A stretch of DNA of 63,549 nt, counting the filler, from Sluysia triapertura (taxonomy: Eukaryota), in NCBI GenBank assembly GCA_046118255.1. It is 5 parts of 5 records of this genome, joined end to end, with 100 filler letters (N's around TTAATTAATTAA, not from the genome) between each part and the next. Parts side by side here need not be neighbours in the genome. Positions count along the whole stretch, not along the records: positions 27,320 to 39,142 come from JBJNIA010167259.1; 4 more parts are not named here. The stretch is one strand, 5' to 3'. Position 1 is the first letter of the stretch, and every line of letters begins with the position of its first letter. Shown here one piece after another: positions 5,771 through 40,829 of the stretch. A model generated the notes under the pieces. The model was not told the DNA's origin, searched no databases, and was given only the letters and a program-made list of their open reading frames with translations. A program made the translations under genes and the position numbers.

Positions 5771-6399
5771 ATTATGTATCTCAAACAATAATTTTATTTA
5801 AAATTTAATTTGGCAATTTAATGAGAACAGGCGAATGATTAACTACTTCCCAATCATCATCAAATTCATTATAATTTATTCATTTCATATTTTATATAAA
5901 TGTAATAGCTTTTGGAAAACTTCATCTGAGAAAATTGTTGATAATAGTTATGAGATACGAGGAACAATAAGAAATATATGCGTAAAGATGAACATAGATA
6001 CATGCAAAAGAGGAACAGCAAACCAAACATAGTAACAATAGTTACAGAAAATGTAACGATATAGTTATTATAACAGTAATCAGAAAATCATCATAACAAT
6101 AGCCATTATTATCAAGAAAATAGTTATTATTATTGTGATAATAATTATGATTATTATAGTTATTAAAAATTATTATAACTATGTTGAGTAACTCTGTTAA
6201 TTAATTTGTTTATGCAAGATGTGTCGATTTATGTTGGTGTTTGTTTGTGATTATTAACTTAGTGTTCAATATATAAATCGAGTTACAAAATGTTTGATGA
6301 ATATTTATAGGCCACGTTGTTAAATATTATTGTATAAATTTATTTTTATTTATAGTGTAAATAATAATCATTTTAATGTTTGATACTTACATTTAACTA

Positions 6400-7110
6400 T
6401 AGAATAACTACTTTAAATTGAGATTGTACAAAGATAATACATTTAGTTAAATAAGTAAAATCATACTAAATTAGGATTAAATGAAACTAATATGAAATTA
6501 AATTTTAACAATATTACGATCGATCAAAATCATTTAAAACTATGATTTAAAATATTCTGTAAATAAAACAAAATCATGTTAAATTAAGATTGCATAGAAA
6601 TAATATGAAATTAAAACTTAAAACATGATCGATCAAAATTATTTTAAAATTAGATTCCGTAAATAATATGAAACATCATATTTATAATTGAGATAATACA
6701 AAATTAAAATTATTTTAATTTCCAACATAATATTCATAAAATAAAATCAGTTTAAAATACGAGTTAGAAATTACAATAATTTAAGCCAAAAAGAAAATCA
6801 TGTCATTATTTTGATTAATTTATGATACAATTTTTATGTGATTATTAATACAAACGATTATTATTATATAATTCTTTACTTTAATTTTTTGATATACAAA
6901 CGACTAGTATTATAATTTTTAGTACTGACTATTAATAGAAACGATTATTATTATTATTGAATGTAATATAATTTGTATTACTTTAATTTTATGTCATACA
7001 AACGATTAACATTATTGAATACAGTGTCATTTTAATACTGACTATTAACACAAACGATTATCATTATCAATTTTTATTACCCTAATTTTATGATATACAA
7101 TTGATTTTCA
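6400..7110. repeat. Degenerate AT-rich minisatellites
   Basis: Recurrent AAATTARGATT..TAATATGAAA units (6400-6720) and ACAAACGATTA(TTAT) units about 45 bp apart (6848-7110). Confidence 0.6.
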
Positions 7111-8192
7111 TTATTTAATGTAACTTATTATTAGTTTTCTAAGCCAAAAAATAGACTGTAGTAAAATGCAAAAAACACAACAATATTTCAAACATTAACA
7201 ATCTCATTGCGGTTATAAACCTCAGCAATCTAATTGTGATTTGTTCGACATTATTTGCTGATTACGTTGTGGTTATTAATCATTGATTATAGTGCGGCTA
7301 TTATTGAAGGAAGGCTTACAATTTTAACTGACGTATCGAATATTTTGTAACTATTTTGTGAAATATATTTTGGCTTAATCTGTTAAAGTACATATAATTT
7401 TAACATTCATTGGTATAAGTTAATCATATTGTTCAAATAAAATTTAGTGATTCTTTTATTCATATTAAAAAGGGATTGAAAAATGAAGCCTCTGAGAAGT
7501 AAACTAAAGGTTATTACTAAATAAACTAAAGTTACAAAATGAAACTTTTGAGAAATAAAGTTCTGTAAGAAATAAAATAAAGTCTTTCTAGAATAAGATA
7601 AAGTTTTACAAAATAAGATAGTGTTATAAGATAAATCGAAGTTTCATAAAACAAAGTTAAGCTTCACCAAATAAAGAGATAGTTGAATACTATTCATATA
7701 TTTAAATAAATTAAATAAAGTTCAATTGATTCTAGGTAAAAATAGAAATTTAATTAAGTAAAACTAATAAGATTTAAACGAGTTAAACACTTCTAGCTGA
7801 AACGAATATGGGATTTACGACATCAAAGATAAGTATTTTAGATTGAGTTAAACTTTTAAACAAATTTAGTAAACTAATTACAGTACATAATTATTGACAC
7901 TCGCTAAGAACATAGAATATTTGACATTATAAACATAAAGCAATACCATAATTTTTACAATAGTTATTATTAATATTGTTATTAATTATTTTATATATGG
8001 TAAAAATATTATATATTGTTGTTTATGAAATATTATTATTTTCCTGAAATGGCATTTCTTTTATTTTTTTTTAAAAAGTTCCTTTATGGATTACTATATA
8101 ACTTCGAAATGATTAACATAATTATTAAAATATAATACTTAATCAATTAACCAAATTTATTAGTATCGTACATATTATATATAATATGGAAA

Positions 8193-8393
8193 TTATTTAT
8201 CGTCAAATTTAAATATATATTCTGTAAATACACCAAGAAATTGAAATAACAATAAAACAATAGCCATGACACCACAATAGTACACTTCCTTATCCAATAC
8301 ATTTCGTATTAAACCACTGCAGCCTTTCAGGAACAAATCAGGACCGAAATATATTAAATCATTAGCTAAAATTAATAATAAAAAGACAAACAA
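8193..8393 (-). CDS. Possible fragment of a multi-pass membrane protein
   Basis: 66-codon open frame with two hydrophobic segments flanking GLIRNVLDKEV. Faint resemblance to MFS/SLC46 C-terminal helices. No splice sites established. Confidence 0.2.
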   Translation of the reverse strand: MFVFLLLILANDLIYFGPDLFLKGCSGLIRNVLDKEVYYCGVMAIVLLLFQFLGVFTEYIFKFDDK

Positions 8394-9789
8394 TTAATCA
8401 AATAAGAACAATTTTGAAATATTACTTTAAAAATATGTATTTTCATTAATAATAATTATTATTATTTTATTATTTATTACAAAAAACATTATTAAAAGTA
8501 AGAATAAGAATTGATAAATTCGGTATAAATATTGAATAAAATAAAACAAAATTTCATAATGGAAAAGGTAATAAAGTATAAAAAGTTTAAAAGTTTTAGC
8601 GAATTAGAGGAAGTGGAGATTAGAAGTACAACAAAACGATGGAGAGTTAATAAATATTAGCAGATTGGAATTTGATATAAAATAAACCAATCTGGGATTA
8701 AAATTCGTTCAAAATTATTTTTGTCATTAGTGTAATTATTATAAAAAGTTCATTAGAGCAGCACAAAACAAACTCAAACTTATTTAACTTCTACTAAAAT
8801 GTCTAATTAAATTTAATCTAAGTCAAAATTAAAAAGAAATTTAATTTTTAATCATTTTTGTTTATTTATTTTTATTTTATTTGAGCTAAAGTTTGAATAT
8901 GTACTTTTATTATATATGCTTTTGTTTATAAGAAAACGTTTTATCTTGTAATTGTGTAAAAATATTAATTGCAAGAGTTTCATTACTGATTTAGTTAAAT
9001 GGCCAGAATTTATTGATGTAATTCTATTTACAAAACCTACAATCAATTTGTTTTAAAACTTATATTAGTGGGTTTGCCTGTGATCTAAGTCTTAGACAAT
9101 AAGGGCTCATCCACAGGATTTAAATACAAACAAATGGAGTAAACTTATGGAGGTTTAATATGCAATTACATATGCCTAACTTAAATAGTTATACCTGCAA
9201 TAACTGCTAAAATAGGCTTATTAAATATGCGTAATTAATAGATTAGTGCTGAATTTAAAACTCATTAAAGAATGCATTTTTAGTAACAACTAGGTTGATT
9301 TTAAGTCCTTTAAAATAGGACGTGGAATTAATAACTTAATGTAGTTTTAAACTGACATACAAAATCAATAATTCAATGGAATTTAAATCGATTATAACTA
9401 TATAAATTAAAATCACTTTATTTTAAGTCCTTATTTAAAATGCGTCAATAAAAATATTTTAACATTTTGATGAAATAAATTTAATTCAATAATAATATTC
9501 ATTCTTGAAAATCGGCAATTAATATTATGTAGAACGGAAAAATTAAAACATATATAATGAGGCTTAAACTTAGTATAAAGGTTTTATACATTTAACCGAC
9601 GTTAAAATCTTATAGAATTCGTAAGAAAATCAGAATAAATGTATATGCAACAAGAACTAGTACAGATGTAATAAATATTGTTGAAGTTAATAAATTTTTA
9701 AAATCACTAAGGTTAAGTACAAATTCCTAGGTTGCTGATGGATATTAACTGTACACTTTCTCACCACCTAATCACACTTGAATTTCATA

Positions 9790-10245
9790 ATAAAACTCTC
9801 TCACATAAATCATTAGAACATCTTTAAGAATTAAAGAGACAAGAACAGCTGTGACAATTGCATGGTACGGCCTGCCTAACTTTATAAAACACAAAAAATT
9901 GATTAATGATCAACAACCGTCATTTTATTTTACTCTTACTCTATGCTAGACTTCATGAAATTGATTGACCGGAGATCGAACCAGGAACCTCTACCTGCGT
10001 AGTTTGATGCTCTACCATTGAGCTATCAACCCCATCTAACAAATTTATTTTATTAAAGTCAAATTTACCAAATGGCATTTTAGGCCTTTTACCCCCAACA
10101 TCTATCTATCTTTACTTAACTCACTACTCACATTAAAAAATAAATTGTCAACACGCGTAAAAATAATTAATTTAAGTTTACTTTTTAGATTTTAATTGAT
10201 TTTCATTTTTTTCACACCAAATTTTCTAATGGAAAGTGTTTAAGC
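9790..10245 (-). mobile_element. Repeat family A fragment interrupted by a ~160-bp insert
   Basis: Colinear with 56136-56445 and 59415-59680 on both sides of 9945-10105. Confidence 0.75.
9961..10032 (-). tRNA. tRNA pseudogene or tRNA-derived element (ACG at the anticodon position, anticodon stem broken)
   Basis: Minus strand reads GGGTTGA TA GCTC AATGGTA GAGC A TCAAA CTACGCA GGTAG AGGTT CCTGG TTCGATC TCCGG TCAATCA. A and B boxes and the D stem are intact, acceptor stem 6/7, T stem 4/5, anticodon stem unpaired. Confidence 0.75.
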
Positions 10246-13200
10246 TTCCATGGAACATATATGTTTGTAAATAAATTATAAGAAAAAAATTGATGCTTTA
10301 TAAATAATTAATTTTGTATTATTTTGTTAAATTTATTTATTTGTAAATAAAATTAAAAAATCAATATTTTATAAATGTAAAGGTAAAAGTAAAAATTATT
10401 GTAAAGGTAAAAAATAAATGGTAAAAATTATTCTGTCGATAAAAATTAATGTATTTTATTTAAAATACATTTTCATATAAAAATATATAATAATTAAATT
10501 ACATTGAAATTACTATTGAAATATTATAAAAAATAAAATTATTAAAAAACAAATAATAACAATATTATTATTATTTAAAACATTTAAAACTAAATATTAT
10601 TGTTTGTAATAATGATTGTTTACGGATAATCATAGCAACATAAAAACTATAAATACAGTGGGATTTTGTAAAATAGTCACAACAAAAAACTACAGCTCAT
10701 ATTTGTTATATTTGGAAGAAAGTTATACTTTATTGTTTTCTGATTACAACTTGAGAAAATTAGGAGAAAGCCATATTTTATTCATAAATCTAATCATTAG
10801 TTTTATATTAACTAATCATTAGTTTTAAAATAAATTTAATTAATTACATAAATTATACTTAATTTTAAATTACAATTTGGTAAATATTTGGTAAATAAAT
10901 AAACTTTGTTCATAAAATTGTGATAATTAAATATTAATTATAAAATTAATATTACTAAATATTGTTTGAACGAACCTTTAACATTTTATGTGATATTTTA
11001 TTACTAAATTTAATATAATTTTGTGTATTTGATACTGTACAAGTACATTCGATTATTAAAAATTTTATTTGTAATTTGTATGTAAATATTGATTTCACAT
11101 TTTCTAAAGTTATACAATTGAATTGATAGTTTTTTATCTAAAGTACGAATTAACATTTTATATCCAAAGTTTAATTGATTTAAATTTTATTATTGAATTT
11201 AATATTTTGTGTTTTTTAATAAATAATTTATAACATTCCTTGTGTCTTTTAATAAATAATAATCATTTAAATATTTTTATTCGGATAATTTTTGAATAAA
11301 ATAATAATTAAATTAACACTTTGTATCTTTTAAATAGTGATTATATCTATTCTTTAAATTATAATAAATTCTTCATTAAGAAAATTCAATTACAAAAAGT
11401 GTTTCGAACTAGGTATCACGTAGAATCAATAATTTATATACATATATACCTCCAGTGTTACTTTTTTTATTGACGCTGCAAATCTATGTGTTGGCACTTG
11501 AGTGAGTAAAACCAGTATCATAAAGAATTCACAATAAGAATAAGGAAACTAATCCAAAACAATTTTATCTTATATCCGTCTTTAATCTTAATCTTCACAT
11601 AAATAATTAATTTTGTAAAATTTTGTTTGTAAATAAAAAATTTAATTTGTTTATAAATAAATTGTAAAGAAAAAATATTTTATAAATAGTCAATTTTGAA
11701 AAAAAATTTAATTTAAAAGTTAGTAATTACTTTTTGATTCTATGTTGATATAAAAAGTTTTGACAATATTTTTTATATTTACTTTACGGTGATATGAAAA
11801 AACTTTAGTAATTTTTATATTTATTTTATGATCATAAAGGTTATAAAAATTGTTTCATGAAATAATTGTTTCATGTGCGTTGAAATTATTAAAGAGCACG
11901 CACAAAAGTTTTATAAATCTTTCAAAATATATATTTGTTTGGAAGAAGATTGTTGAAATTAATTTGGGACGTTGAATTATTGTGTAACTTTGGGATTGTG
12001 GAAATAGACCTTTTTATTGGAAGGAGATTTTGTCAGATTGGACATCTATTTAATTGGAAAGGAGATTCTTTGGAATAAATTCTTATTAAATTGATCACTT
12101 AAGTTAATAATTAATAAGTGTGCTCCAATAATTTTAGTAATAATATACAACGTAAAATCTTTATATATTCAAAACCAAGTATCAAACCTGGTTCAGTTTA
12201 AACTAAAATTAAAATCCAAATAAAGATCATCTCTTTATTTTTAATCTGTACATCATATAAATTTGTAATTTTTATTCTTTAACCTGTGTATGTTATATAT
12301 TATATTTATTTAATAAAATTTTGTTTTTCATGTTATATTTTTTCGAGAATCTTGAGGATTAAATTTAAAAAATTTTGAAAGTTAAGAAAGAAAATAAACT
12401 AGAAAGAAAATTTAAGTGAATAGAGATATATAACATTAAAGAATACACGTAAAAGATAATTTAAAAAGATATTTAACTGCAGCATAGTGACCCTCTAATA
12501 GAGAATTCATTTTAAGAAAAACTTTAATTTTTATATTCAAAAATATATTCTTTTTTAATCTGTAATTGCGTCCTCGTTCAGATGTTGGGATTAGTGAAGG
12601 GTAAAGGTAGATATAAAGGTTTAAGACTCAGGATAACATAATAAGGTGAACGTTATTGAGGAATTGAGATAGAGGATTCTGACGAATTGTAACGGTAAGA
12701 TAAATATATAAGATACTTGAATTAAGACAAAACAATGAGAAATACGAAGAAATAACCCATGACAAGGTTTTATTTGTTAAAATACTAAGGTACATTTGTT
12801 AATTAACTTAATTAAAATTTATTTAATTTAATAAATTATTAGAGATGTTTACTCATGATATAAAAATGTTAAATTTAGTGTATACTCTTGATTTTTATTA
12901 TTGGTTTTAATGATGAAGTGTTACGAAGCACGTCCACGCAGATAACGTAAAATTAGTTATTTTAATTAATTTTGTAATTTAAAATTAAAGATTAAATACG
13001 TTCAAATGTCTGAGAATTAATAAAGTATATATCAGATTAAAGCTTGTAAAGAAACAAGGGAGTACACGCTATTGAGATTGACGTGTGACATACCGTTAAC
13101 ATGTTACGTATGATATAAAATATTGTTATTAAAAGAAATTTTATATTAGATTATAAATATGGGTAAATTAGGATGATGCATTTTCATATTTGTTTGTATA

Positions 13201-27108: not shown

Positions 27109-27394
27109 AATAATAATTTATTATTGTAGGGAACTCGTCATCCGGTAATCATCATAATTCATCACACAACATACACTATAACTCATCTCATAAAGTTCAA
27201 CATAACTCATCATTTAAAANNNNNNNNNNNNNNNNNNNNNNNNNNNNNNNNNNNNNNNNNNNNTTAATTAATTAANNNNNNNNNNNNNNNNNNNNNNNNN
27301 NNNNNNNNNNNNNNNNNNNTCTAACTTTGAACTTTTTAGTATACAGGTAATTAATTAATTATATATGTACAATGAAAAACACAAAAAATTTTTT

Positions 27395-27463
27395 TTGGGG
27401 GAGGGGGAGGGGTGTTGAAAAAATTTTACCGTCCCGGTTTGGCGAAAAAAAATGGTAACCCTA
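27395..27463 (-). mobile_element. hAT (Blackjack-like) terminus
   Basis: Minus strand begins TAGGGTTACCAT, followed by the AAACCGGGAC subterminal motif. Confidence 0.5.
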
Positions 27464-29663
27464 CATATAAGTCATCTAATAAGACTTTGACATGGTCGTA
27501 AATTTTTAAGGTTATAAAACATAAGTTCACTCATACATTACTGAAGTATTTCTTTTTGAATAACCAAAAAGGTCTTTTTAGTATAGTGTTCCGTACTTTA
27601 GTAGTATAATTGAGATTAAAACAATGGATTTTTAAAGTTATAACGTGACTTATTTTATAAAATTAAATGAAATAAAAAGTACGAAATATGCTACACGCAA
27701 AAACTGAATAATTTAGCATAAAAGACGCAGAGTACGACAATAATTAAGTAAACGAGTTTGTATAACACAAAATAATAATAGCACAATATTAAGATTACAA
27801 TGGACATAAATGTCGAAAGTAATTAAATTCGATTGTGGTGGTCCAGCCCACAACTATGTACACATCACATAAATCACACCAATCAATTACACAAACCTCA
27901 TCACAAAAATTACATTATAACAAGTTTTGCCCATACCATTCAAAACACCACATCACCCATCGTTACGAAATTACAGATGCCTAATAAAATTTATTTTATT
28001 AGACACAAAGCTCGTTGTCATCCGGTCATCATTATTACGCAGTATTTTAATAATGGATTCAATCAAACAAATAGTTTCTACAGGACTTGGAATTTTATTT
28101 TCATCTAATTTACCAACGGTATTTTAAAAATGTGTATTTCGAAGCAATAGTTCTCCCTTTAGATATACTGAATCTAAATCTTTACGCCACCCATATTTTT
28201 AAAACATTTTGAGAATAAATTTAATAATTCAATACTATTATTGGATATTTAATAATTTCCTGTCTCAGTGCATCAATACTTACTACCTCATATATCAAAT
28301 CAAACTTTGTATTAACAATTCTTAAAATGTGCTTTGGATTTTAAATAGGAAACATTAAATAAATATTGCAATCAAGAGGTTAATTTAAAAAACAATATTA
28401 TTTATATTTTTGCATTTATCAAAATTTAAGTATTTATCTAAATTGTGTAACTGAATCTATTTTCTGTTTAATAAAATATGCTTTTGTGATATTTTATTTC
28501 ATTATTTTAATTCAAAAAAGCCACACACTTATGTTTCTTATGTTTCACAACCATTTCCAATTTGGCAATTCAATTTAACTTTTTTAAGAAAGTGATCAAA
28601 TATTTTAAATTAAAAACTAATTACAATGTTAATTTATCATAATTATACAATTATAACTATATATTCAATAAATAACACAAATATTTTATGTAAAAGCTAA
28701 GTAATCATAAAAAATTTGATTTACGATATTTTAAATGTCATTTTAATCATTTTATGGTGAAAAAAACACTAAAAGATTTAAATATATTTGTGAATATAAC
28801 TAGTGGCACATTTTGCTGACTTTTGTTGTATGCAATTAACTTAAAACTATTTGTTAGTTCTATTAATGTGAATATATGGACTGACAAATTATTCAGATAT
28901 TAATTTCATTATAAAAATTCTTGATAGATTGATTTATGTAAAAAATATGATAATAATATAATAGTGCACAGTCATGCAAAAAAAGATTTTACTTTATTTG
29001 GAGGTTTTTATTTTTCATATGCATAAAGATTATTGTTGGAATATAAGTAATTAAGTAAATAATTTGTTTGTTATGAATGGTTTTAATTTGTTGAATACGT
29101 TATTTTAAACTAAATAATGAAGTATACTGAGGTTTTAGTTCTTATAAAAAATTAGAAAAGTAAAGAAAAAGCAACTTAAAAACCATGAAAATAAACTACA
29201 AATTGGTTACTTTTATTTCAAATACTAAAATTACATCTAAGTACATATTTCAAAACCAACATTACTCGCAAGTAATTTGAAACATTAAAATTAAAAAATT
29301 AAAATTAATAAATGAATTGTTGTATTTTGTAATATCAAGTAAAATTTATTATTATAAGATACAATTATTTATTTAGATTTTAATCTGTGTGAATTCCTTA
29401 CGACATTGGCTAATACGTAAGTGACGTATATGATAATTATTTGGAGATTTTTTTATATCTTAAAGTGCCAAAAGACTAGTTATAGAACTATTGCTATAAT
29501 GTCAGAGATTCAGTTTCTGTCTTATTGCAATGAGAGGTTAAAATTATGTATTATACGTCGGATCCCATTTAAAACGGATCTCCGAAAATGAAATTTTAAT
29601 GTTAAACTATGAAAACAAAAAGGATTTTTGGGGCATTTTATAATGTCAAGTGTCTAAAAATAG

Positions 29664-29951
29664 ATTTTAAGATTTAAAAGTACAAATTAAGTATTGATTT
29701 AATAATTTTGTCTAAAAATAATTAATATTTAGTAAAATAATTTAGTAATATTTAATATATTATTGATTTTTCTAAAAAATAATTTAACAGACCTAATTAT
29801 TATTGGTATTATTATTGTTACTTTTATTATTATTATTTTATTATTGTTATTTTTATTATTAAAATCATTATCAATATTTTTATTTTTAAATTATTATCAA
29901 TATTATTTCTAAAATTCTTTTCTTTTAATAAATCAAATTTTATTCGGACAT
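29664..29951 (+). repeat. Direct repeat, copy 1 (copy 2 at 33898-34111)
   Basis: High identity by eye from TTTTAAGATTTAAAAGTACAAATTAA to TTTTATTCGGWCAT. Copy 1 has extra internal AT-rich sequence. Confidence 0.9.
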
Positions 29952-30620
29952 CATAATCATTCTTCAATTATCGATATTTCAAATGTACTAAAACCATTTA
30001 AAATATTACCAATAATTTTCGAGATGTCTTTGAAACTGGATATATAAGTTTAAATAAAGGAGACAAACTTAACATTAAAAACAATGAAAAAATAATTTAT
30101 AATGTAAGAACAGCTGGAAATGTATTGATGGATGGTGCTTGTGAAAGAGGTTCAATAGAATGCGAAGGGAAAATATATGACAACGTAGTAGCTCAAGAAA
30201 CATACGTATTAAGTTTAAGATCTTTTAATGAAAGTTTTGACTTAGAAAAAGGTACAATGATATCACGTCCATTTTGTAAAAGTACCAAACAAGTTGCGAT
30301 ACTGGTGAATCTATATTAATATACGAATTAGAAAAATTTCAATGCCAACTAATATTTTTGATACAATTTTAATTTAATTTCCGGATTTATGCACCAAAAT
30401 GAACTAGCTGTAGAAGATAATTTAGACATACCAGAAAGAAAAAGATTAAACGAAGTGGAAACCTCAACAATTTTAATGGCTACTAAAGAAGAAGATGGAT
30501 TGATATTAGTATCAAAAAAGTTGGTAATTAGATGCGTACAGGAAATCATAGAGACAAATTATCAAGGAATCTATTTATCTGAAAAAACAATTATGCAAGC
30601 AAGGAAAGGTATAGACAAAA
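29943..30620 (+). pseudogene. Chuvirus/herpes-gB-like fusion glycoprotein (env-like) remnant, frameshifted
   Basis: Joining frames at ~30010, ~30290 and ~30368 gives FGHHNHSSII...FRDVFETG...RTAGNVLMDGAC...GKIYDNVVAQ...LRSF...FCKSTxxSCDTG...C...IRCVQEIIETNYQGIYLSE. This is colinear with the recalled chuvirus-type G pattern CGMHSHxS...CxxxHxTG...TLAGxVxxDGxC...GxWDNVVVQ...C....C...CGxxxxxTEHPxLFIxE. Confidence 0.75.
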
Positions 30621-30773
30621 AATTTAAAACTATCTTTTCGAATTTTTACTTAGCTTTGTACATTAATTAGGGACAAATTTTATTAAATTTATATTGAAAT
30701 AATTCATAAAACTTTATTTACTAAGTATACGTTTACTTTCTTCTATCTTATTTTTCATTCATATTTTTAGATA

Positions 30774-31076
30774 ATGTATTACATCAAATGTTCAATATGT
30801 CAAAAATTAATTCACAAACATTATATAAAAACATTTTCATGAATGCATAAATTCCATTTCAAATGAATTATAAACCTTTTTCATTTTACACTAACTAAAC
30901 ACATGAATTGTCCATTGTGTAGAACAATGATAAAAGAAATACAGGTATTTTATAGGAGAAAATTCCGTCATTCATATGTACTCGAAAAAATTTCATCAAA
31001 TGTTAATATAGAAAATATTCAGGTACAAGAAATAGAAATTATTCAACCTACCTATCTTAAACAATTTAATAAATAG
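30774..31076 (+). pseudogene. RING-H2 finger protein with two in-frame TGA codons at Cys ligand positions
   Basis: MYYIKCSICQKLIHKHYIKTFS*MHKFHFK*IINLFHFTLTKHMNCPLCRTMIKEIQVF...* fits C-x2-C-x13-[TGA]-x-H-x2-H-x2-[TGA]-x14-C-x2-C. The TGA codons are at 30840 and 30864. Confidence 0.8.
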
Positions 31077-31594
31077 GAAATAATCATACCTAAGACAAAT
31101 TTCCCTCCTGGTCTGACGCGTTCTCAAAAACACCACTGTCGCAGAGACAATTGAGACGTTGGTATAAAAAGATAGGATTATATAAAAATAATTTAAGAAT
31201 TAAAAATAACCATTTCTTAAAAAATGTACTTAATATTTCATTTGCATTTTTTATTTTTGTGCTTCCTAATTAGTAATTAAATTAGTAATTAAATAAATAT
31301 AAAATCAAACTAGCGATTAAACTATCTAAATTTGTATCTGCTACTTTTTACTAAATATGTTCATTTATTTAGATGTCATCAACTTCCTTTCCACACGCAT
31401 ACATCACAAATAATATCCCTTCTTTATACAACGACATAGACCGCTTTGTGGCAAAAATGATACCCATTGTGTATTTTCAAAATCAAATCTTACCCCTAAT
31501 ATTTTGAAAAATGAATTGGATCACAATTGTATAACTCATTTATTTCAAATCTGTGAGAAAAGTAAAGCAAATAGAATAAAAACTTAACTTAAAC

Positions 31595-31640
31595 TGAGTT
31601 CACCAAGGTAATGGGCTTACCAGTTAGGGCCGGCCGTTGG
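31595..31640 (+). repeat. GC-rich dispersed motif B (putative retroposon 3' end)
   Basis: TGAGTTCACCAA.GTA.TG.GCTTACC.GTTAGGGCC is shared with 48134-48180. Related versions lie at 60749 (+) and 61757 (-). Confidence 0.75.
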
Positions 31641-32689
31641 ATTTATAAATCAAATAAGTCTCAAAAATATGCTAACAGAGCCTTAATTCTTAATCCTATC
31701 TGGAGGTAAACTTTATTAATGACTATTGTAGTGCTAAGATCCTCTAATAATTGTCAAATTGAGGTTTTCTGTTATTAAAAATATAAGTAGGTTTGAAAGT
31801 TATGCGTCATAATATTTAAAAGAATTTCTAGAAAACTTTGATTTTTAAAATATAAATGAAAATTGAAATTTATTTAGTAATTTTACGTAGATTCCATTAT
31901 ATGATGATTTTCCGTGGCTAGAAGTAAATTCTAGCGGTTGAAAACATGGAGCAAAACGAGAGATTTTATAGTTAAATCTATGTAATTTACAATAATAAAA
32001 GTCAAAAGATTTTCTTAATTTATTCTAAAAATTACGTTACTATAATTCACTGATAATAAAAATTATAGATTTTCGCAAATTATCTGTTTAAGTTAATTTC
32101 TTGCTAATAAATTTTAAGAAACAATAATTTAGGTACAGATCTAAGAAAAGATCCAATAATTATATACAAAAATTTAAGTTGATTTTACCTTTGATACTTT
32201 ACAGTATCTCCCTTAAAAATAATTAAACTAACGTAAAATGTAGATTCACAATGATTAAAGAATATTAAAAAAACTACTGGAGTCGTAGCCAGAATTTCGA
32301 AGTCTGTTGCAAAAAATTGTGCAAATGTTGTGAAAATGTTACTTATTTATATAGTTTTAATCTGACCTTCATCGGATTAAAACAAAATAATTAAAATAGT
32401 TATTAACATTTTACGCTAACTTGATTATAAATAATTAAAATAATTATAGTTAAATAATTATAGGCAGTTAAATAATTAAAATTAAATAATTAAAATTACT
32501 TACATTGGAACAAAAATTAGAACAAAAATTTCTAAATTAGAAGCAATAAAAATTTTAATAATGATCAATTAACGTATACAAAATTAATCAATAAATCAAT
32601 TAAATGTTTTATGCACAAAATTTCGCTGCACACAAAATTAATTTTTTAATGTTCAAATTCAACCCCCATTAATTATAAACACTTTACAG

Positions 32690-33240
32690 GGATACCCCAA
32701 ATACAATAGTCAGGTATTTCTTGCCGCGGCTAGGATTTCGCTTAAAATATTAATATTTGTAAATAAAGTCCCACTACATTCGCGTATTCAAGGATACTCT
32801 TCTTTAGTCATAACTAATTTAGCACAAAATTGTGAAGTACGCATAGAATCGGAAGGGCTGCCTACTTTTTTTAAATATTGAAAAGCCAGTAGATCTGCCT
32901 AAACATTCTGTATTGTATACTGATGATAAGGATAGTTCACCCATACACCACACTTATCTCTGTTGGAAAAAATTATACTAGTTTTTGTTGCAGTCAGTTG
33001 GCACTAGATTTTAAAGAAGGTTATCAACCAATAAGGGTTTGCCTAATGCCGTATCACAAACTCTTCCATTCTGATGAGTTGTTAAGGCTCCGTATAAGAA
33101 TTAGAAATTTTTTAGTAACAGAACACGGATTAAGTGAAAACGATCTTCTAATGCGAAGGTTATAGCTGATGTTCGTCAATATTGGCTTACGTCACTATGT
33201 GGCATTCTTCCCTGATATAATTATTAAGGGGAATCATCAA
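32690..33240 (+). pseudogene. Decayed coding-like segment, unknown product
   Basis: GC above the flanks, with broken frames including the 80-aa ORF 32923-33165. No family recognised. Confidence 0.3.
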
Positions 33241-33626
33241 CCTTACTTATACAAATTTAGTATCACATGAATCATTAAATCCTATATTAAGGGCACCGAA
33301 GGTTTTTAAATTATTATATCCCTTCCCACCGCGTGTTTCGTGTTTGCAGCACGCCAAAGACTTAATTTCATTATTTGATTTAATTCCTTTTTGCCACAAA
33401 TTGATAATTCAAAATTTATTCCTCCTTTAATTTTGCCTGCTTCTCTTGCTTCTTCTTCTTCCTCTTTTTCTCTATTCCATCTACCTCTTCTGACAAAAAC
33501 TCAATCTGCACAGAATTTCCTCACTTTGTTAAGCCTATACCTTTTTCACCTCCTCACAAACATCATAAAAGTGATACATTAAATAATAACACAAATACAA
33601 TCAAAGAAAATCCACACATTCACAAC

Positions 33627-33876
33627 ATGAAGACAGAACAAAAAACGACAAAATCTACCAAAACTGAGAGAAAATAATCAACAAAACCACCGGAGAAAGT
33701 TGCGATCACCAAGAAGCAGAAAATGGATTCGCCAAACGTTGATCTAGACGACACTGTCGATGACGATGTCGGTGTTTTGGGAAAAAAACTTAAATGATAA
33801 TGAATTTTTTGGTTGTGATGACGATATCCCAGTCATCACTTTATTAGATGATGATTTTACTTTTGATTTTGATTGA
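33627..33876 (+). pseudogene. Decayed small basic/acidic protein
   Basis: MKTEQKTTKSTKTERK*STKPPEKVAITKKQKMDSPNVDLDDTVDDDVGVLGK, then a frameshift in an A-run, then LNDNEFFGCDDDIPVITLLDDDFTFDFD*. Confidence 0.45.
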
Positions 33877-33897
33877 GATAGTAATAATACCAATTAT

Positions 33898-34111
33898 TTT
33901 TAAGATTTAAAAGTACAAATTAAATATTGATTTAATAATTTTATTGATTTTTCTAAAAATAATTTAATTGACCTAATTATTATTGGTATTATTATTATTT
34001 TAATGTTATTTTTATTATTAAAATCATTATCAATATTTATATTATTAAAATTATTATCAATATTATTTCTAAAATTCTTTTCTTTTAATAAATCAACTTT
34101 TATTCGGTCAT
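33898..34111 (+). repeat. Direct repeat, copy 2
   Basis: Matches 29664-29951. Confidence 0.9.
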
Positions 34112-35937
34112 GGTCAAATTAATAAATACATAAATAAACGTGAAATATTCACAAAAGCACACAATAAAAGTCACAATAAAAAAGTTTCTGTACAGAAGTC
34201 ATCGCAGTTTTTCGTTAAACGTTATTTTACTCCGCTCATCCAACAAGGTTCAATATTTGAATTTCAATTCAGGTGTTCGACTTCTTCGAAAAATCAATCA
34301 ACTCACAGATTACAATATCTTTGATAGGATTTTATTCTGCTTTTAATCGTTAGTTTAAATTATATAGGTTTTATAATCACATTGAATTAAAAGTAATTTT
34401 GCACTTAATTATTTTTATACCCCTTTTAAGAGGTGTGGAAACAGTTAATAAAATAAATATCAAAGATTATATATTAATCTGATTAAAATCATTATTACTT
34501 GTGCTATCATACTTTTTATAAATTTAATAATATTTCCTTTTAAAATTTTTTTGTTGAGTTCTTATTTACTGCTAAAATAAGGTGGCCGATCAAGAGATTT
34601 GAAATAAGGTTGAAAAGTACCACTTAAAATAACATTTTAAATTGAATTTAACTGTAATTTAAGCACTTTTCCAAATAACATTCGATAACTTCTTAAAAGA
34701 ACTAAGAATAGTATCGCACAAATCACGACAAATCTTGCCAAAAATATAATTTAATCTAACATAAACCTATTTATACCTCCATATAAGATCTTCTAAATTA
34801 CTGCATACAACTTAGCCCTTAAGTGAATAAGACTAAGATTGTAAGGGACACATAGTATAAATAAATAAAACAATTCAAGTATAACACTAGCAATAATCCT
34901 TTATAATCTTTATAACAGTTTAATGTTTTAATTAATTATGAAAACACAATTTGAATAATTTGTATTAGGATAAAAAATATAAGAAGCTTACAAAACTTTG
35001 TTATATAATAAATATATAAATGTTACAAAAATTAAATACTAGTGGTAATTAATTTTTCTTAATATAAAGTTTTTGAAATTAATTTTGTTTCAACCGTTTA
35101 AACGGTTGAATAAAAAAATTAAATAAAAGAATTCGAGTAAGATTTTAGGTCAACAACAAAATGGTTGCGAAAATTTAAATTAACTGACTAACTGATTATT
35201 CTTTTGTAAAAATGTTGTCAATTTTGAATCGATACGGTTGTTCTCTACACTATGAGAATTTGTATAATGTCCAGATTTTTGTTACGGCCAAAGTAAAATT
35301 TTTATGTGTGATTTTGTTAAGAATTTGTTGATTGACTATCGTGAATTTTATATTCCTAGTTATTGTTGAGAAATATTATGTGAAATGTTATATATTTATA
35401 CTTAATTCTTAAGGCCAAGTATGACAAAATTTAAAAAGTTTTTTATCAATTATATACAATTTTACAAATTATTTATTAAAAATATTCCTTTTAAATAATC
35501 TGTTAATCAAATTAAACTAAAATTAAATTATTATTAATAAATTAATGTTATTGATTATTATTAATTAATGTTAAAATAAAATTATACACATAATTAAGAA
35601 ATATTTCTTTCAATAAAGGTTATACAATTAATCAAAAGTTAGATTATTCATAAAATAGTTATTTATAAATTACACAAGTTGACTTTAGTTCACAAAAATT
35701 ACAAACTTTTGACGTTATACACTTTTATTGTTTAGTGTTATAAGCTATATGTTAGGTTAAATTATATAAAAAAAACTAATTAAATACAAAGTAACAAATT
35801 ATTATAATATTACCTTTAAACAACTAACACTGATTTTTATTAACTAAACCATATTAACAAAATTATGAAATGGAAATGTGTTTTCGTGATTTTTGTGCAT
35901 TTATATATATTTTAATTAATAAAATAGTTTATTTAAT

Positions 35938-35942
<5 letters not shown>

Positions 35943-35990
<48 letters not shown>
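35943..35990. repeat. (TAT)n microsatellite
   Basis: Seen directly. Further runs at 37620-37662 and 38082-38132. Confidence 0.95.
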
Positions 35991-35994
<4 letters not shown>

Positions 35995-37617
35995 ACTATT
36001 ATTATATCATACCTACAAAAATTTTAGGTTATTGAACTATTATAAAGCATTTTAAGAAATATTTTGTACGCTTTTGAGTAATTTTTATAGTGATATAAAA
36101 GTATGGCATAAGTCAAAAATATTAATAAGTGTACACAACTTAAAATATTCAACTTATGATAGATATAATAGCATGTAAAAACCTGTATATTTAAATATAT
36201 AATTTATTAAAATAAATAATTTATTAAAAATGTTGTTTTAAAAGAAAAAGCAATTATTATTTTATTATAAAACATTAGAATTAAACCTAGAATCAAAATT
36301 AAAAAATTTGTAAAAATAAACAAAGTATTATCAAAAAAATATAAATAAAACAAAGACAAATTAATTGTATTAATAAAATGAAAGTGCAGAAATAAACGCC
36401 GATAAAAATATAAAACTTTCTTTACACATTTATGTATAACAGTTTGCGTAATTCTAGGGAATTATTTTTGAGAAAATAGTTGCTTATATAGAATATTTTT
36501 TTAATAATGATACTCGATGAGACAGCAAAAAAGAAAATTATTAAAAAATAAAAATAAATACTAATCAAACTGTTTTAAAACAGCTCTTTTTCTAACGAAC
36601 TGAAGTATTGGACCAATTTGTATTTTTTATCAACCTTTTCGTAATTGTTTATTTCCATATTTTCTTATTTTACAAAGTTAATTTTTATAATTAATTTTGT
36701 TATTAATAATATTAGTATTAATAATAGTAACAATATTTTCAGAATATTATAATTTTTTATTATTACTAATAACATAAGTGGTGCCACACTTCTGACAATA
36801 ATAAGTACAATATTACATCAATTTGTTCTAAAGTAAAATTAATTCTTTAAAACAACTTATTTAATCATTTAAAAAATTGTACTACTGTATAAAAATAACA
36901 AAAATAACTATTATTTCCATATGAAAAATAAAATTAGTATTATTATTTAATAAATTATTATTAAATTTAATAATTGTTAATCATATTAAATGCACTATTA
37001 AATGATTTTACTATTATTTTGATTTTATTCTTACCTTGTTTTAATAAATTAAAAAAATTATATAAAATTGTAATTCATTTTTATACTTAAATAATTTATA
37101 AAAATTATATGGTGACATTTTAATGGAAAAATTGTTTATTTTTAAAATACATTGACATAATAAAATATTGCAACCTAGAAATGTATCTAAAATAATTATA
37201 CTTTGATTGCTATAATTATCACACACTTCCATAATATTTGATTTGTTATTTTTATGATTAAATAGTTTATTCACAATTTCATTGCTTGATAGTTCAAGAA
37301 TAACTTACTAATTTTAGAAATTATCATCAATTTTTTAATTAAATCTTGCTTAAATTTTTTTGTGGAAAAATTGATTTTATATTTAATCATTAATATTAAT
37401 TTGATAATATTTTATATTATTATAAAAATTTAATATATTTTAAATAATAAAGAAAAATCTTATATTTTAAATTAAAATCAAATGTTATAGGTTATATATA
37501 ATAAAAATGATAAAATAATTATCATCTAAAATATATATAAATATATAAAATAAAACTTTTGAATATAAGTAATACTTATTTCAACAAGTACATATATGAT
37601 TAATGTTAAATTTTTTG

Positions 37618-37663
<46 letters not shown>

Positions 37664-38072
37664 TATAAAGGGATAGTATCTTCAAGAAATGAGATATTTG
37701 TCATATTATTCTTGTATTAGAAAAAAATGTGATATTTTTAATTATTTCATAATCGTCCTGTAATTTGATTTTCTCCAGTTATGGTGGTAAAGTTTTTGAA
37801 ATATAAATGGTGTTATATTATTATCATTATCATTATAAATTATATTATCATATTATCATTATCTTATTATAAGTTTTTATAAATCTATATTCATTCCACA
37901 AATATATCACAATTTTTGCAACGTAATCACTTATAAATTAGCATCATGATTTTAAATTCTACTTTTATTTTATTTTACAGTTTAATTCTTTATATGAATT
38001 TATTATATGCGTTTTTCATTGTAAGTAAAAAATTACTTTTGCAGTTTTTCCGTATATAATTGAATACAATAA

Positions 38073-38133
<61 letters not shown>

Positions 38134-40829
38134 GTATTAGTATTAGTATAATTTGATATCATTGAATGCACAATTAGTGTTACTATAACTAAAATATATG
38201 TTACTTTTATAAACATATTTTATTTTTAAATAATTTATCATAATATGTTAATCTCTGGTTAAAATATGTACAATTATCAATAAAATATCCCATCAAATAT
38301 CAATAAAATATTACAATTTATAAAAAAAAGTTATTATAAATGTAATTTAAAAATAACACATTGTTTAGTAGAAATAAATTGTTTATATTTTTTTCAAAAA
38401 AATTAATTAATATTTTAAATAAAAATAATTTTTCAGAAATTTAATTATGAAACAATGTGATTTATTTTCATAGAGATTTTTATAAGTATTTTGAGATTTT
38501 TTAAACTTTATAACCCCTTACAGGACTATATGTTTATTAGATCTTAGAAGGGTTAACTTAACAATAATTTTGCAATTAAATACAAATATAGAATTAACAA
38601 ATGTTAAAATATATTTATTAATTAAGAAAATTAATTATTTCTTATTACTTCTTGCAATGTGTAAATTTAAAATTTTATTAACTTTAAAATTTTCCGAATT
38701 AAAGAACGTTCTCTAATTTTTATGTTTTAATAAGTTACTTTTCATTATTAATTTTTCATTATTTTTCATTAATTTTTCATTATTATTAATTTCATTATTT
38801 TTAATTATTAAGTCATTATTAATTTTGATTTTTAATATTTCAATTACTTTTTATTATAAAAAATTAGAAAAATAATTTGAACTAATTACATATTAAATAA
38901 AAACTCAAAAATTAATACTTAGTTATTTTGTCTTATTCTTTTTACTATATAAATTATAAAGATTTTTTAAAAACAAATTTTTAATATTAATTATTGATTA
39001 TTGTAATTATTTATGTTTTTCTTCTTTTTCTTCTAATAATATTAATAATAATATTATTATTATTTTAGTCTAGGTCCTATTTATAGATTTTATTTCATTT
39101 GCTATTTTATCCACTTTATAATAATGCAATTTCTTTCTGATTNNNNNNNNNNNNNNNNNNNNNNNNNNNNNNNNNNNNNNNNNNNNTTAATTAATTAANN
39201 NNNNNNNNNNNNNNNNNNNNNNNNNNNNNNNNNNNNNNNNNNTTGATTAAATCGTTGTAGTTTTTTTGTTTAAAATAAATTTGAAAAAAAACGCTCATGA
39301 ATTATTCCTCAACCCAATACATTTATTACTTGATTATTGATTTTTTAAATATATATGACAAATTATTAAAAATATTATTACTATAAAATGATATTTGTAA
39401 TAGCATTTATGTTATGAAAAATCAATTAAAGGTGTAACAAACTGTAAACTGTAACAAATTGTGTGTAATGAAGTATAAAATTGATAAGTTTTTATTAAAT
39501 TTCGAAATAATATTAAATTAAGTAAAAAATCAAATAATATGTGTACGTCTTTATGTATAAATTGTTGTTGAGGTTAGTTTCAAAATTTACAATTATAAAC
39601 ATAAATTGATTACTTGTTTTGTAATAATTTAATAAATATATAATTCAGTAATTCATACTATAAAATAAATAAATAATAAAATGTTAAAGTGATTGAATTT
39701 TAATATTATGAATGCGTGTAATTATATCCACAACAGATCGCCACTCTAAATTATTAGCAGTTATTTTTTAGTGTACTAAAAATTAAAATGTAATAAATAA
39801 AAATTTTACATATGATTCTCATTGTATTAGTTAAGTAAAGCAAACAAGTTACTCAAAAGAGTAATATAGTTTTATTTAGTGTTTAAGATTATATGGTACT
39901 TAAAAAATTGAAATTTTATTTATGTATTACTTATAATCTTAAGTACATATTTTGATAAAATTAAAATCCGTATTAGTAAAAATACAAACACGAACTAAAT
40001 AGATTTATTAATACCAATTATATTAATTATCTCCAAACTAATTTTGCGAGAAAATATGTAAACACAATGTCAAGCGTTGTAAATATGTCAGCATAATAAA
40101 GTTCAAAATACTGCGAGTTCCACGAAAAGTAATCGGTTAATAAACACTTTAAAATCAGTATATTGTTTGGTTGCGAGATGTTCAGTGAAGTCTGAAGACT
40201 TTGGCTATTGTATAATTTATTTATTTATATTAATATTATTCAGTGGCTAGCTCTTTTTTTCTCGAGGTTCGTATGAACTACTATTACAGCAATGTGTCAC
40301 TGCGACTGACATAAAAACAAAATAATGTTAATTATGTCCAGAAGAAGTCAGCCAATCACAATTATTTTAAATATTATCAACTTTTGAACATAATTATTAA
40401 CACAAGCCAATCATAATTATTTTAAACACTTAAACACCATCAATTTTGAACATTATTAACAATACATTATTGATTTTTGAATTATTAACATTTTGAATTT
40501 TATTATTAGTTTTATTATTAACATTATTAATTAGAAATTTTATTGTTTTCATTGGAAATTTTATTATAGTTAGTTTTAATATTATTAACTTTTAATTATT
40601 ATTAACTTTTAGTTATTCGATAATTTTTGTTTAAAAAATTAAAATTTTAATTTAACTTTGTTTAAATATTAACCTTCAAGGTTAATTCGTGAGAGTATAA
40701 ATAGTAATAATAAATTTCACAGAAACACAAAAATTTTTTTACATATTTTCTGAACCAATTTTTTGGAAGGGCTAAATTTTGAAAAAACTTTCGCGAACTA
40801 ATCTGTGTACGTTAGTGTAGTGGCCAACA

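What the first reader, a model, noticed from the sequence alone, without database searches (positions are those of the whole stretch)
30774..31076. RING-H2 finger whose only two internal stops are TGA at zinc-binding Cys positions
Seen: in a 100-codon ATG-to-TAG frame with no frameshift, both interruptions are TGA and fall exactly on RING ligands 3 and 6; the other six ligands are intact. Known: TGA is one substitution from TGY and can encode Sec, or Cys in some genetic codes. Inference: either coincidental TGY>TGA decay or UGA recoding (a seleno-RING, or a donor with an alternative code). Decay is the more likely explanation, because the neighbouring genes are decayed and coding-like sequence continues past the TAG to ~31154.
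Basis: partly seen in the sequence, partly recalled or inferred. Interest (0 to 1): 0.72.

Follow-up and report, generated by a model that had tools for sequence, protein, structure and literature searches.

The report
Decayed RING-H2 relic beside viral glycoprotein fossil
A real but orphan RING-H2 zinc-finger reading frame with stop codons at two of its eight zinc-binding positions lies next to a frameshifted fossil of a viral fusion glycoprotein in very AT-rich, gene-poor DNA; it is most likely a dead gene remnant, not a case of stop-codon recoding.

Summary
Frame 30774-31076 (+) reads C-x2-C-x13-TGA-x-H-x2-H-x2-TGA-x14-C-x2-C, with RING-H2 hallmarks (CSIC, H-x-F-H, CPLCR). The pattern occurs once in the piece and in 0 of 1500 shuffles, so it is a true RING-H2 relic.

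Its surroundings are decayed. On the same strand, 130 nt upstream, 29946-30643 is a fossil of a Monjiviricetes-type viral fusion glycoprotein (Pfam PF24664 above cut-off; tblastn E=1.8e-15). It has three frame changes and covers only about a third of the domain. Nothing else in the 11.8 kb is recognisably coding.

No SECIS element was found (Rfam at two thresholds, own motif scan). No relative of the RING frame turned up in any collection, so the paralog test could not be run. The six Cys codons of the glycoprotein relic are all TGT or TGC.

Under neutral decay, two nonsense hits both landing on Cys codons has a probability of about 0.01. That is odd but was selected post hoc.

Best reading: pseudogene, with chance third-position changes (about 0.8). 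UGA read as Cys or Sec is not excluded, because the piece gives no independent test of the host's genetic code (about 0.04).

The parts
30774..31076 (+). RING-H2-like reading frame: 100 codons from ATG to TAG, with two in-frame TGA
30789..30920 (+). RING-H2 core (44 codons). Ligand codons: C 30789-91, C 30798-800, TGA 30840-42, H 30846-48, H 30855-57, TGA 30864-66, C 30909-11, C 30918-20
   Evidence: one match in the piece and 0 of 1500 shuffles
30903..31076 (+). Longest intact ORF inside the frame (57 aa from an internal ATG). It holds only the last two ligands, and no relatives were found
29946..30017 (+). Viral fusion glycoprotein relic, first alignable block (same frame as the RING frame)
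   Evidence: P0006 residues 66-82, P0003 228-245
30023..30291 (+). Glycoprotein relic, second block, in a different frame from the first
   Evidence: Pfam PF24664 E=2e-7, 29.8 bits against a cut-off of 27; tblastn with P0003 E=1.8e-15
30292..30360 (+). Glycoprotein relic, third block, frame changed by one base relative to the second block; the change is not at a stop codon
   Evidence: P0006 181-203, 48% identity, collinear; DNA read
30362..30643 (+). Glycoprotein relic, fourth block, back in the frame of the second block. Similarity ends here, at about position 310 of the 653-position profile
   Evidence: nothing glycoprotein-like downstream
29665..29951 (+). Copy 1 of a short AT-rich dispersed or direct repeat. 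Its 3' end abuts the start of the glycoprotein relic
33898..34111 (+). Copy 2 of the same repeat, about 4.2 kb downstream. About 95% identical in aligned columns, and lacks two blocks of 52 and 21 nt

Best explanation
The frame is the non-functional remnant of a RING-H2 (C3H2C3) zinc-finger gene or exon in gene-poor, very AT-rich eukaryotic DNA. It lies immediately downstream of a decayed endogenous viral glycoprotein fragment. The two TGAs are ordinary nonsense substitutions at the third base of what were Cys codons. That both fell on zinc ligands is coincidence, sharpened by ascertainment: the frame is only recognisable as a RING because the other six ligands survived. Nothing is made from it. 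Shown: the motif, the stops, the decayed neighbour, and the absence of SECIS and of relatives. Inferred: that the stops arose by substitution, and that the host uses the standard code.
For: (1) The RING-H2 pattern is real: one match, against 0 of 1500 shuffles. (2) The same-strand neighbour 29946-30643 is a viral fusion glycoprotein relic (PF24664; tblastn E=1.8e-15 and 9.5e-11 to P0003 and P0006; P0003 itself matches PF24664 at 2e-90). It has three frame changes, two of them not at stop codons, and only about a third of the domain is present, so this locus tolerates decay. (3) No other segment of the 11.8 kb matches a protein family, and there are no tRNA or Rfam hits. (4) No SECIS: Rfam at gathering score, Rfam at E<=10 on 30600-33000, and my own quartet/helix scan, strict and relaxed. 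(5) All six in-frame Cys codons of the glycoprotein relic are TGT or TGC (read). (6) Codon-position composition of the RING frame is nearly flat (G at position 1 is 9%). The glycoprotein relic keeps a coding signature (G at position 1 is 28-33%, at position 3 is 4-12%). (7) A TAA/TAG-free run of about 100 codons is expected by chance in this piece; the mean longest run in Markov simulations is 106. The open frame is therefore not evidence of selection.
Against: Under a neutral one-step model, the chance that two nonsense hits both land on the six Cys codons is about 0.01 (56 one-step paths to a stop, 6 of them at Cys). There is no frameshift in 100 codons, whereas the neighbouring relic has three in about 230. 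The neighbouring relic has no nonsense codon in its aligned frames, whereas this frame has two. The host's genetic code could not be tested independently, and no paralog or ortholog could be found to show the ancestral codons.
Confidence: 0.8

Rival explanations
1. The source organism, or the donor of this gene, reads UGA as cysteine, as Euplotes does. The frame is then an intact, or recently intact, 100-aa RING-H2 protein.
For: Both TGAs sit exactly on ligands 3 and 6, and the frame has no other defect. The coincidence needed by the decay model is about 1%. UGA=Cys/Sec is established in Euplotes, whose non-coding DNA can be about 23% GC (PMC4759687). Two of six Cys codons being TGA would be unremarkable under such a code.
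Against: None of the six Cys codons in the adjacent glycoprotein relic is TGA. That relic is broken by frame changes away from stop codons, so it is not explained by Euplotes-type slippage at stops. There are no C4A4/G4T4 telomere repeats. The E. vannus germline genome is 36.6% GC (PMC12513430), against about 22% here. The longest TGA-sense frame elsewhere, 33419-33856 (-), has no family match. Monjiviricetes-type glycoprotein fossils are typical of arthropod genomes (PMC7642597, PMC10084718, listed). The prior that a given piece comes from such a lineage is very small.
Confidence: 0.04
2. The TGAs encode selenocysteine, giving a 'seleno-RING' with Sec as zinc ligand, directed by a SECIS element in the 3' UTR.
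For: In-frame TGAs at positions normally held by Cys, which is the usual Sec/Cys relationship.
Against: No SECIS at Rfam gathering score in the whole piece. None at E<=10 in 30600-33000. No candidate in my own quartet-plus-helix scan, even when relaxed, where shuffles give 0.38. From established knowledge, two Sec residues in a structural zinc site have no precedent and no catalytic rationale. The locus sits in decayed DNA.
Confidence: 0.01
3. One or both TGAs are sequencing or assembly errors in an otherwise intact RING-H2 gene.
For: Both stops share the local context A-TGA-AT. The rest of the frame is undamaged.
Against: Two independent substitution errors, not indels, at third codon positions 24 nt apart would be unusual. 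Reads are not available here. The flat codon-position composition and the decayed neighbourhood do not suggest a live gene.
Confidence: 0.04
4. The RING relic is not an independent host pseudogene. It belongs to the same insertion as the glycoprotein relic, as a chimeric reverse-transcribed copy or a mobile element bounded by the two repeat copies at 29665-29951 and 33898-34111. This concerns origin only and is compatible with the decay explanation.
For: Same strand, only 130 nt after the last alignable glycoprotein residue. The first repeat copy ends exactly where glycoprotein similarity begins, and a second copy lies 4.2 kb downstream.
Against: No known Monjiviricetes gene order puts a RING protein inside or after a truncated G gene. 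The locus L002, which carries the relative P0003, has no RING nearby. No reverse transcriptase, integrase or gag remnant lies between the repeats.
Confidence: 0.25
5. The Cys/His pattern is a chance arrangement in AT-rich DNA and not a RING at all.
For: No Pfam RING model reached E<=10 on the separate pieces. No homologue was found.
Against: 0 of 1500 shuffles reproduce even the permissive pattern. The non-ligand hallmarks are also present: hydrophobic residue inside C-x2-C, F before the second His, I after ligand 6, and C-P-x-C-R. The pieces are too short (22, 7 and 69 aa) for a 44-position profile to score.
Confidence: 0.02

Closest known systems
RING-H2 (C3H2C3) zinc fingers of E3 ubiquitin ligases (Pfam zf-RING_2 type)
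   Same: Ligand order and spacing. Hallmark residues: C-x-I-C, C-x-H-x-F-H-x2-C-I, and C-P-L-C-R.
   Different: Ligands 3 and 6 are stop codons. The conserved Trp after ligand 6 is Leu. The finger starts five codons after the ATG. No profile match on the pieces and no detectable relatives.
Endogenous viral elements derived from Jingchuvirales/Mononegavirales glycoproteins (Pfam PF24664 Monjiviricetes_fusion), as described in arthropod genomes (PMC7642597, PMC10084718)
   Same: The neighbour 29946-30643 matches the family profile above its cut-off and aligns collinearly with two family members. It is fragmentary and frameshifted, like most such fossils.
   Different: Only about profile positions 90-310 of 653 survive. 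It is only 24% identical to its nearest relatives among 1.84 billion representatives. The host is unknown.
UGA=Cys/Sec decoding in Euplotes (PMC4759687 and references therein)
   Same: In-frame TGA at positions that require Cys.
   Different: No independent sign of that code or of that organism in the piece. The adjacent relic uses only TGT/TGC, and its breaks are not at stop codons.
Eukaryotic selenoprotein genes
   Same: In-frame TGA at Cys-equivalent positions.
   Different: No SECIS element. Two TGAs in structural zinc ligands rather than one in a redox site.

Membership tests
RING-H2 zinc finger | Eight zinc ligands in the order C3H2C3 with canonical spacing | tested here: inconclusive
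   Spacing is met exactly. Six ligands are encoded and two are TGA stop codons, so the feature is met only if TGA is read as Cys or Sec.
RING-H2 zinc finger | Pattern beyond chance | tested here: met
   One match in the piece, 0 of 1500 dinucleotide shuffles.
RING-H2 zinc finger | Profile-HMM match above the Pfam gathering score | tested here: not met
   The pieces of 22/23 and 69 aa were scanned separately and no RING model scored at E<=10. The 7-aa middle piece is too short to scan. The read-through with X at the stops has no reference and was left out.
RING-H2 zinc finger | E2 binding and ubiquitin-ligase activity | not testable with these tools
   Needs biochemistry.
Selenoprotein gene | SECIS element in the 3' UTR | tested here: not met
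   Rfam at gathering score, Rfam at E<=10, own scan strict and relaxed: none.
Selenoprotein gene | Cys-containing homologues with TGY at the TGA positions | not testable with these tools
   No relatives found in any collection.
UGA=Cys genetic code (Euplotes type) | In-frame TGA at conserved Cys columns in other genes of the same genome | tested here: inconclusive
   The only other coding relic has six Cys codons, none of them TGA. The sample is too small, and no intact gene is in the piece.
UGA=Cys genetic code (Euplotes type) | Organism markers (C4A4 telomeres, gene-sized chromosomes) | tested here: not met
   No C4A4/G4T4. 11.8 kb without an intact gene. Germline DNA of such a ciliate would not be excluded by this.
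Monjiviricetes-type fusion glycoprotein (PF24664), endogenous relic | Profile match above the gathering score | tested here: met
   29.8 bits against a cut-off of 27, E=2e-7, profile positions 112-207.
Monjiviricetes-type fusion glycoprotein (PF24664), endogenous relic | Collinear alignment with full-length family members, conserved Cys columns kept | tested here: met
   tblastn with P0003 E=1.8e-15 and P0006 E=9.5e-11; five Cys columns aligned.
Monjiviricetes-type fusion glycoprotein (PF24664), endogenous relic | Complete, uninterrupted gene | tested here: not met
   Three frame changes, only about a third of the domain present, and nothing downstream.

The most novel reading that the evidence does not exclude
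The two TGAs are decoded, either as Cys by a reassigned code in the source organism or as Sec, so the frame encodes an intact 100-residue RING-H2 protein whose zinc sites use UGA-encoded ligands. If the host is not a Euplotes, this would mark a new lineage with UGA=Cys, or the first seleno-RING.
Probability: 0.04. Interest if true: 0.7.

Novelty: new member of a known kind. Interest (0 to 1): 0.17.

Why it matters
As a pseudogene it matters little. It is one more dead RING-H2 remnant, beside one more fossil of a negative-strand RNA virus glycoprotein in an AT-rich eukaryotic genome. The placement of both stops on zinc ligands is the kind of signal that flags stop-codon reassignment. If the source genome turned out to carry TGA at Cys columns in other genes, this locus would be an early pointer to a variant code. 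The glycoprotein relic is also very divergent: it has only two relatives at E<1e-3 among 1.84 billion representatives. It may therefore record an unsampled viral lineage.

Tried and rejected
(1) An intron model linking the two coding-like blocks at 30002-30316 and 30362-30667 and a splice acceptor before 30771. Rejected: alignment to P0006 shows the gap is filled by a third block in another frame, so these are frame changes and not introns.
(2) The RING frame as part of the Cys-rich glycoprotein ectodomain. Rejected: no similarity of 30774-31076 to P0003 or P0006 even at E<=50.
(3) Euplotes-type +1 slippage at W-W-W-T-A-R sites as an explanation for the glycoprotein frame changes. One junction (near 30360) does lie at a TTT-TAA. 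The other two lie away from stop codons.
(4) PPR-protein hits to the 105-aa glycoprotein piece. Rejected as artefacts of summing one weak match over many identical repeats; no single stretch passes in the PDB search.
(5) Exact-product look-ups of four ORFs of the piece: none on record.
(6) Searches for RING relatives: word search, IMG/VR, JGI metagenomes, PDB, and within the piece and L001/L002. Nothing found.
(7) Two Pfam calls failed on my coordinate slips, one reference containing a stop codon and one 7-aa piece.
(8) Left out: a Pfam scan and a structure prediction of the read-through frame with X at the two stops. The tools take no reference through a stop, and the joined string has no reference.

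Full report
**Observation**

- It has 100 codons from ATG to TAG.
- It has two internal stops, both TGA, at 30840-30842 (codon 23) and 30864-30866 (codon 31).
- Cys codons (all TGT) are at codons 6, 9, 46 and 49. His codons are at 25 and 28.
- The spacing C-x2-C-x13-[TGA]-x-H-x2-H-x2-[TGA]-x14-C-x2-C is that of a RING-H2 (C3H2C3) finger, with the TGAs at ligands 3 and 6.
- Non-ligand hallmarks are present too: a hydrophobic residue inside the first C-x2-C, F before the second His, I after ligand 6, and C-P-L-C-R at the last pair.

**Is it more than chance?**

A permissive RING-H2 expression that allows a stop at up to two ligand positions matches once in the six frames of 27320-39142. It matches in none of 1500 dinucleotide-preserving shuffles. 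From the codon frequencies I estimate roughly 4e-5 chance matches per Mb. The finger is a real relic of a RING-H2 domain.

The open frame itself carries little weight. In Markov simulations of this composition, the longest TAA/TAG-free run per piece averages 106 codons. The 25 open codons after the TAG (31077-31151) have no family match.

**Surroundings**

- The piece is 22% GC overall, falling to 13-16% over 35320-38819.
- It has no standard-code ORF longer than 105 codons, no tRNA and no Rfam family.
- The one recognisable neighbour lies on the same strand just upstream. Segment 30002-30316 matches Pfam PF24664, the Monjiviricetes-type viral fusion glycoprotein, above its curated cut-off (29.8 against 27 bits, E=2e-7).
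- An exhaustive HMMER search of 1.84 billion representatives found only two true relatives. P0003 matches PF24664 at 2e-90 and P0006 at 5e-31.
- tblastn of these two proteins against the piece gives a collinear match over 29946-30643 (E=1.8e-15 and 9.5e-11). The match runs through four blocks in three frames: 29946-30017, 30023-30291, 30292-30360 and 30362-30643.
- Two of the three frame changes lie away from any stop codon. They are ordinary frame disruptions, not programmed slippage.
- Only about positions 90-310 of the 653-position profile survive. Nothing glycoprotein-like follows.
- This is a decayed endogenous viral element of a kind well documented in arthropod genomes (PMC7642597, PMC10084718). 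I describe where it is broken and made no mended or consensus version.
- No other stop-free segment on either strand matches a protein family.

**Is the RING frame part of the glycoprotein?**

No. It shows no similarity to P0003 or P0006 even at E<=50. It begins 130 nt after the last alignable glycoprotein residue.

A 215-290-nt AT-rich repeat ends exactly where glycoprotein similarity begins (29665-29951). A second copy lies at 33898-34111. Whether the 4.2-kb interval is one mobile or chimeric unit is open.

**Tests of recoding**

Selenocysteine:
- No SECIS at Rfam gathering score anywhere in the piece.
- None at E<=10 in 30600-33000.
- No candidate in my own scan for the NUGA...AA...GA quartet with flanking helices, strict or relaxed.

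UGA=Cys:
- The piece has no intact gene from which to read the code.
- The six in-frame Cys codons of the glycoprotein relic are all TGT or TGC. This is weak evidence: if a third of Cys codons were TGA, zero of six would still occur about 9% of the time.
- There are no C4A4 telomere repeats.
- Euplotes, the one lineage known to read UGA as Cys or Sec (PMC4759687), has a 36.6% GC germline genome in E. vannus (PMC12513430). E. octocarinatus introns are 23% GC, so composition alone does not exclude the genus.

Paralogs: none could be collected.
- The 69-aa piece 30867-31073 shares too few 5-residue words with any protein of 38-120 aa in the 5.8-billion-cluster collection to yield a candidate.
- It has no relative in IMG/VR or JGI metagenomes.
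- A pattern spanning both TGAs, with every third codon base free, has no match in either collection.
- Four ORFs of the piece are not on record anywhere.

**How odd is the coincidence?**

The present frame offers 56 one-step paths to a stop codon, six of them at Cys codons. Two independent nonsense hits would both fall on Cys codons with a probability of about 0.01.

The frame also has no frameshift, whereas the neighbouring relic has three frameshifts and no nonsense codon. These points keep the recoding reading alive.

Three things discount them:
- The pattern was picked out post hoc from a large scan.
- The frame is recognisable only because the other ligands survived.
- Codon-position composition of the RING frame is almost flat, whereas the glycoprotein relic keeps a clear coding signature.

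**Verdict**

The feature is real. It is most likely a dead RING-H2 remnant with two chance third-position nonsense changes, embedded in decayed DNA next to a viral glycoprotein fossil (confidence about 0.8). Its origin, whether host pseudogene or part of the same insertion, is unresolved. UGA decoding as Cys or Sec is unlikely (about 0.04-0.05 together) but not excluded. The deciding tests are the source genome's code, paralogs and raw reads, and all need data outside this piece.

**Left out**

I did not run a family scan or a fold of the read-through frame with X at the two stops. The tools take no reference through a stop, and the joined string has no reference. Two Pfam calls failed on my own coordinate slips.

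Noticed in passing
window 29946-30643 (+): Frameshifted, truncated fossil of a Monjiviricetes-type viral fusion glycoprotein (PF24664). It is very divergent: only two relatives at E<1e-3 among 1.84 billion representatives, at about 24% identity.
   Followed up: yes
window 29665-29951 and 33898-34111 (+): Two direct copies of an AT-rich repeat of about 215-290 nt, roughly 95% identical in aligned columns. Copy 1 carries two extra blocks (52 and 21 nt). Copy 1 ends exactly where glycoprotein similarity starts. It could be an LTR-like or dispersed element bounding a 4.2-kb unit.
   Followed up: partly
window 32600-33900: An island of higher GC (33-38%, against about 22% for the piece) with several 70-90-codon open stretches on both strands, but no Pfam match and no Rfam match. 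Its nature is unknown.
   Followed up: partly
window 31100-31160 (+): A short patch richer in GC than its surroundings, just after the RING frame's TAG. No family match.
   Followed up: partly
window 35320-38819: Extremely AT-rich stretch (13-16% GC) with several (ATT)n/(AAT)n microsatellites, for example 35943-36005, 37620-37663 and 38076-38153. CpG observed/expected for the piece is 0.95, so there is no sign of CpG depletion.
   Followed up: no
window 35079-35122: A 44-nt near-perfect palindrome (87% self-complementary).
   Followed up: no
window 30002-30316 (+), residues 30-66: This segment draws strong whole-sequence E-values from designer and natural PPR repeat proteins (PDB 5i9g and others; P0001), with no single stretch passing. 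It looks like a repeat-summation artefact and would mislead an automatic annotator.
   Followed up: yes
L002 (ENA ERZ25039515 contig_89787) 6001-10749: The nearest full-length relative of the glycoprotein is called as one 1582-aa product, with the glycoprotein domain followed by retroviral-type aspartyl protease domains. This suggests a retroelement context for that relative.
   Followed up: no
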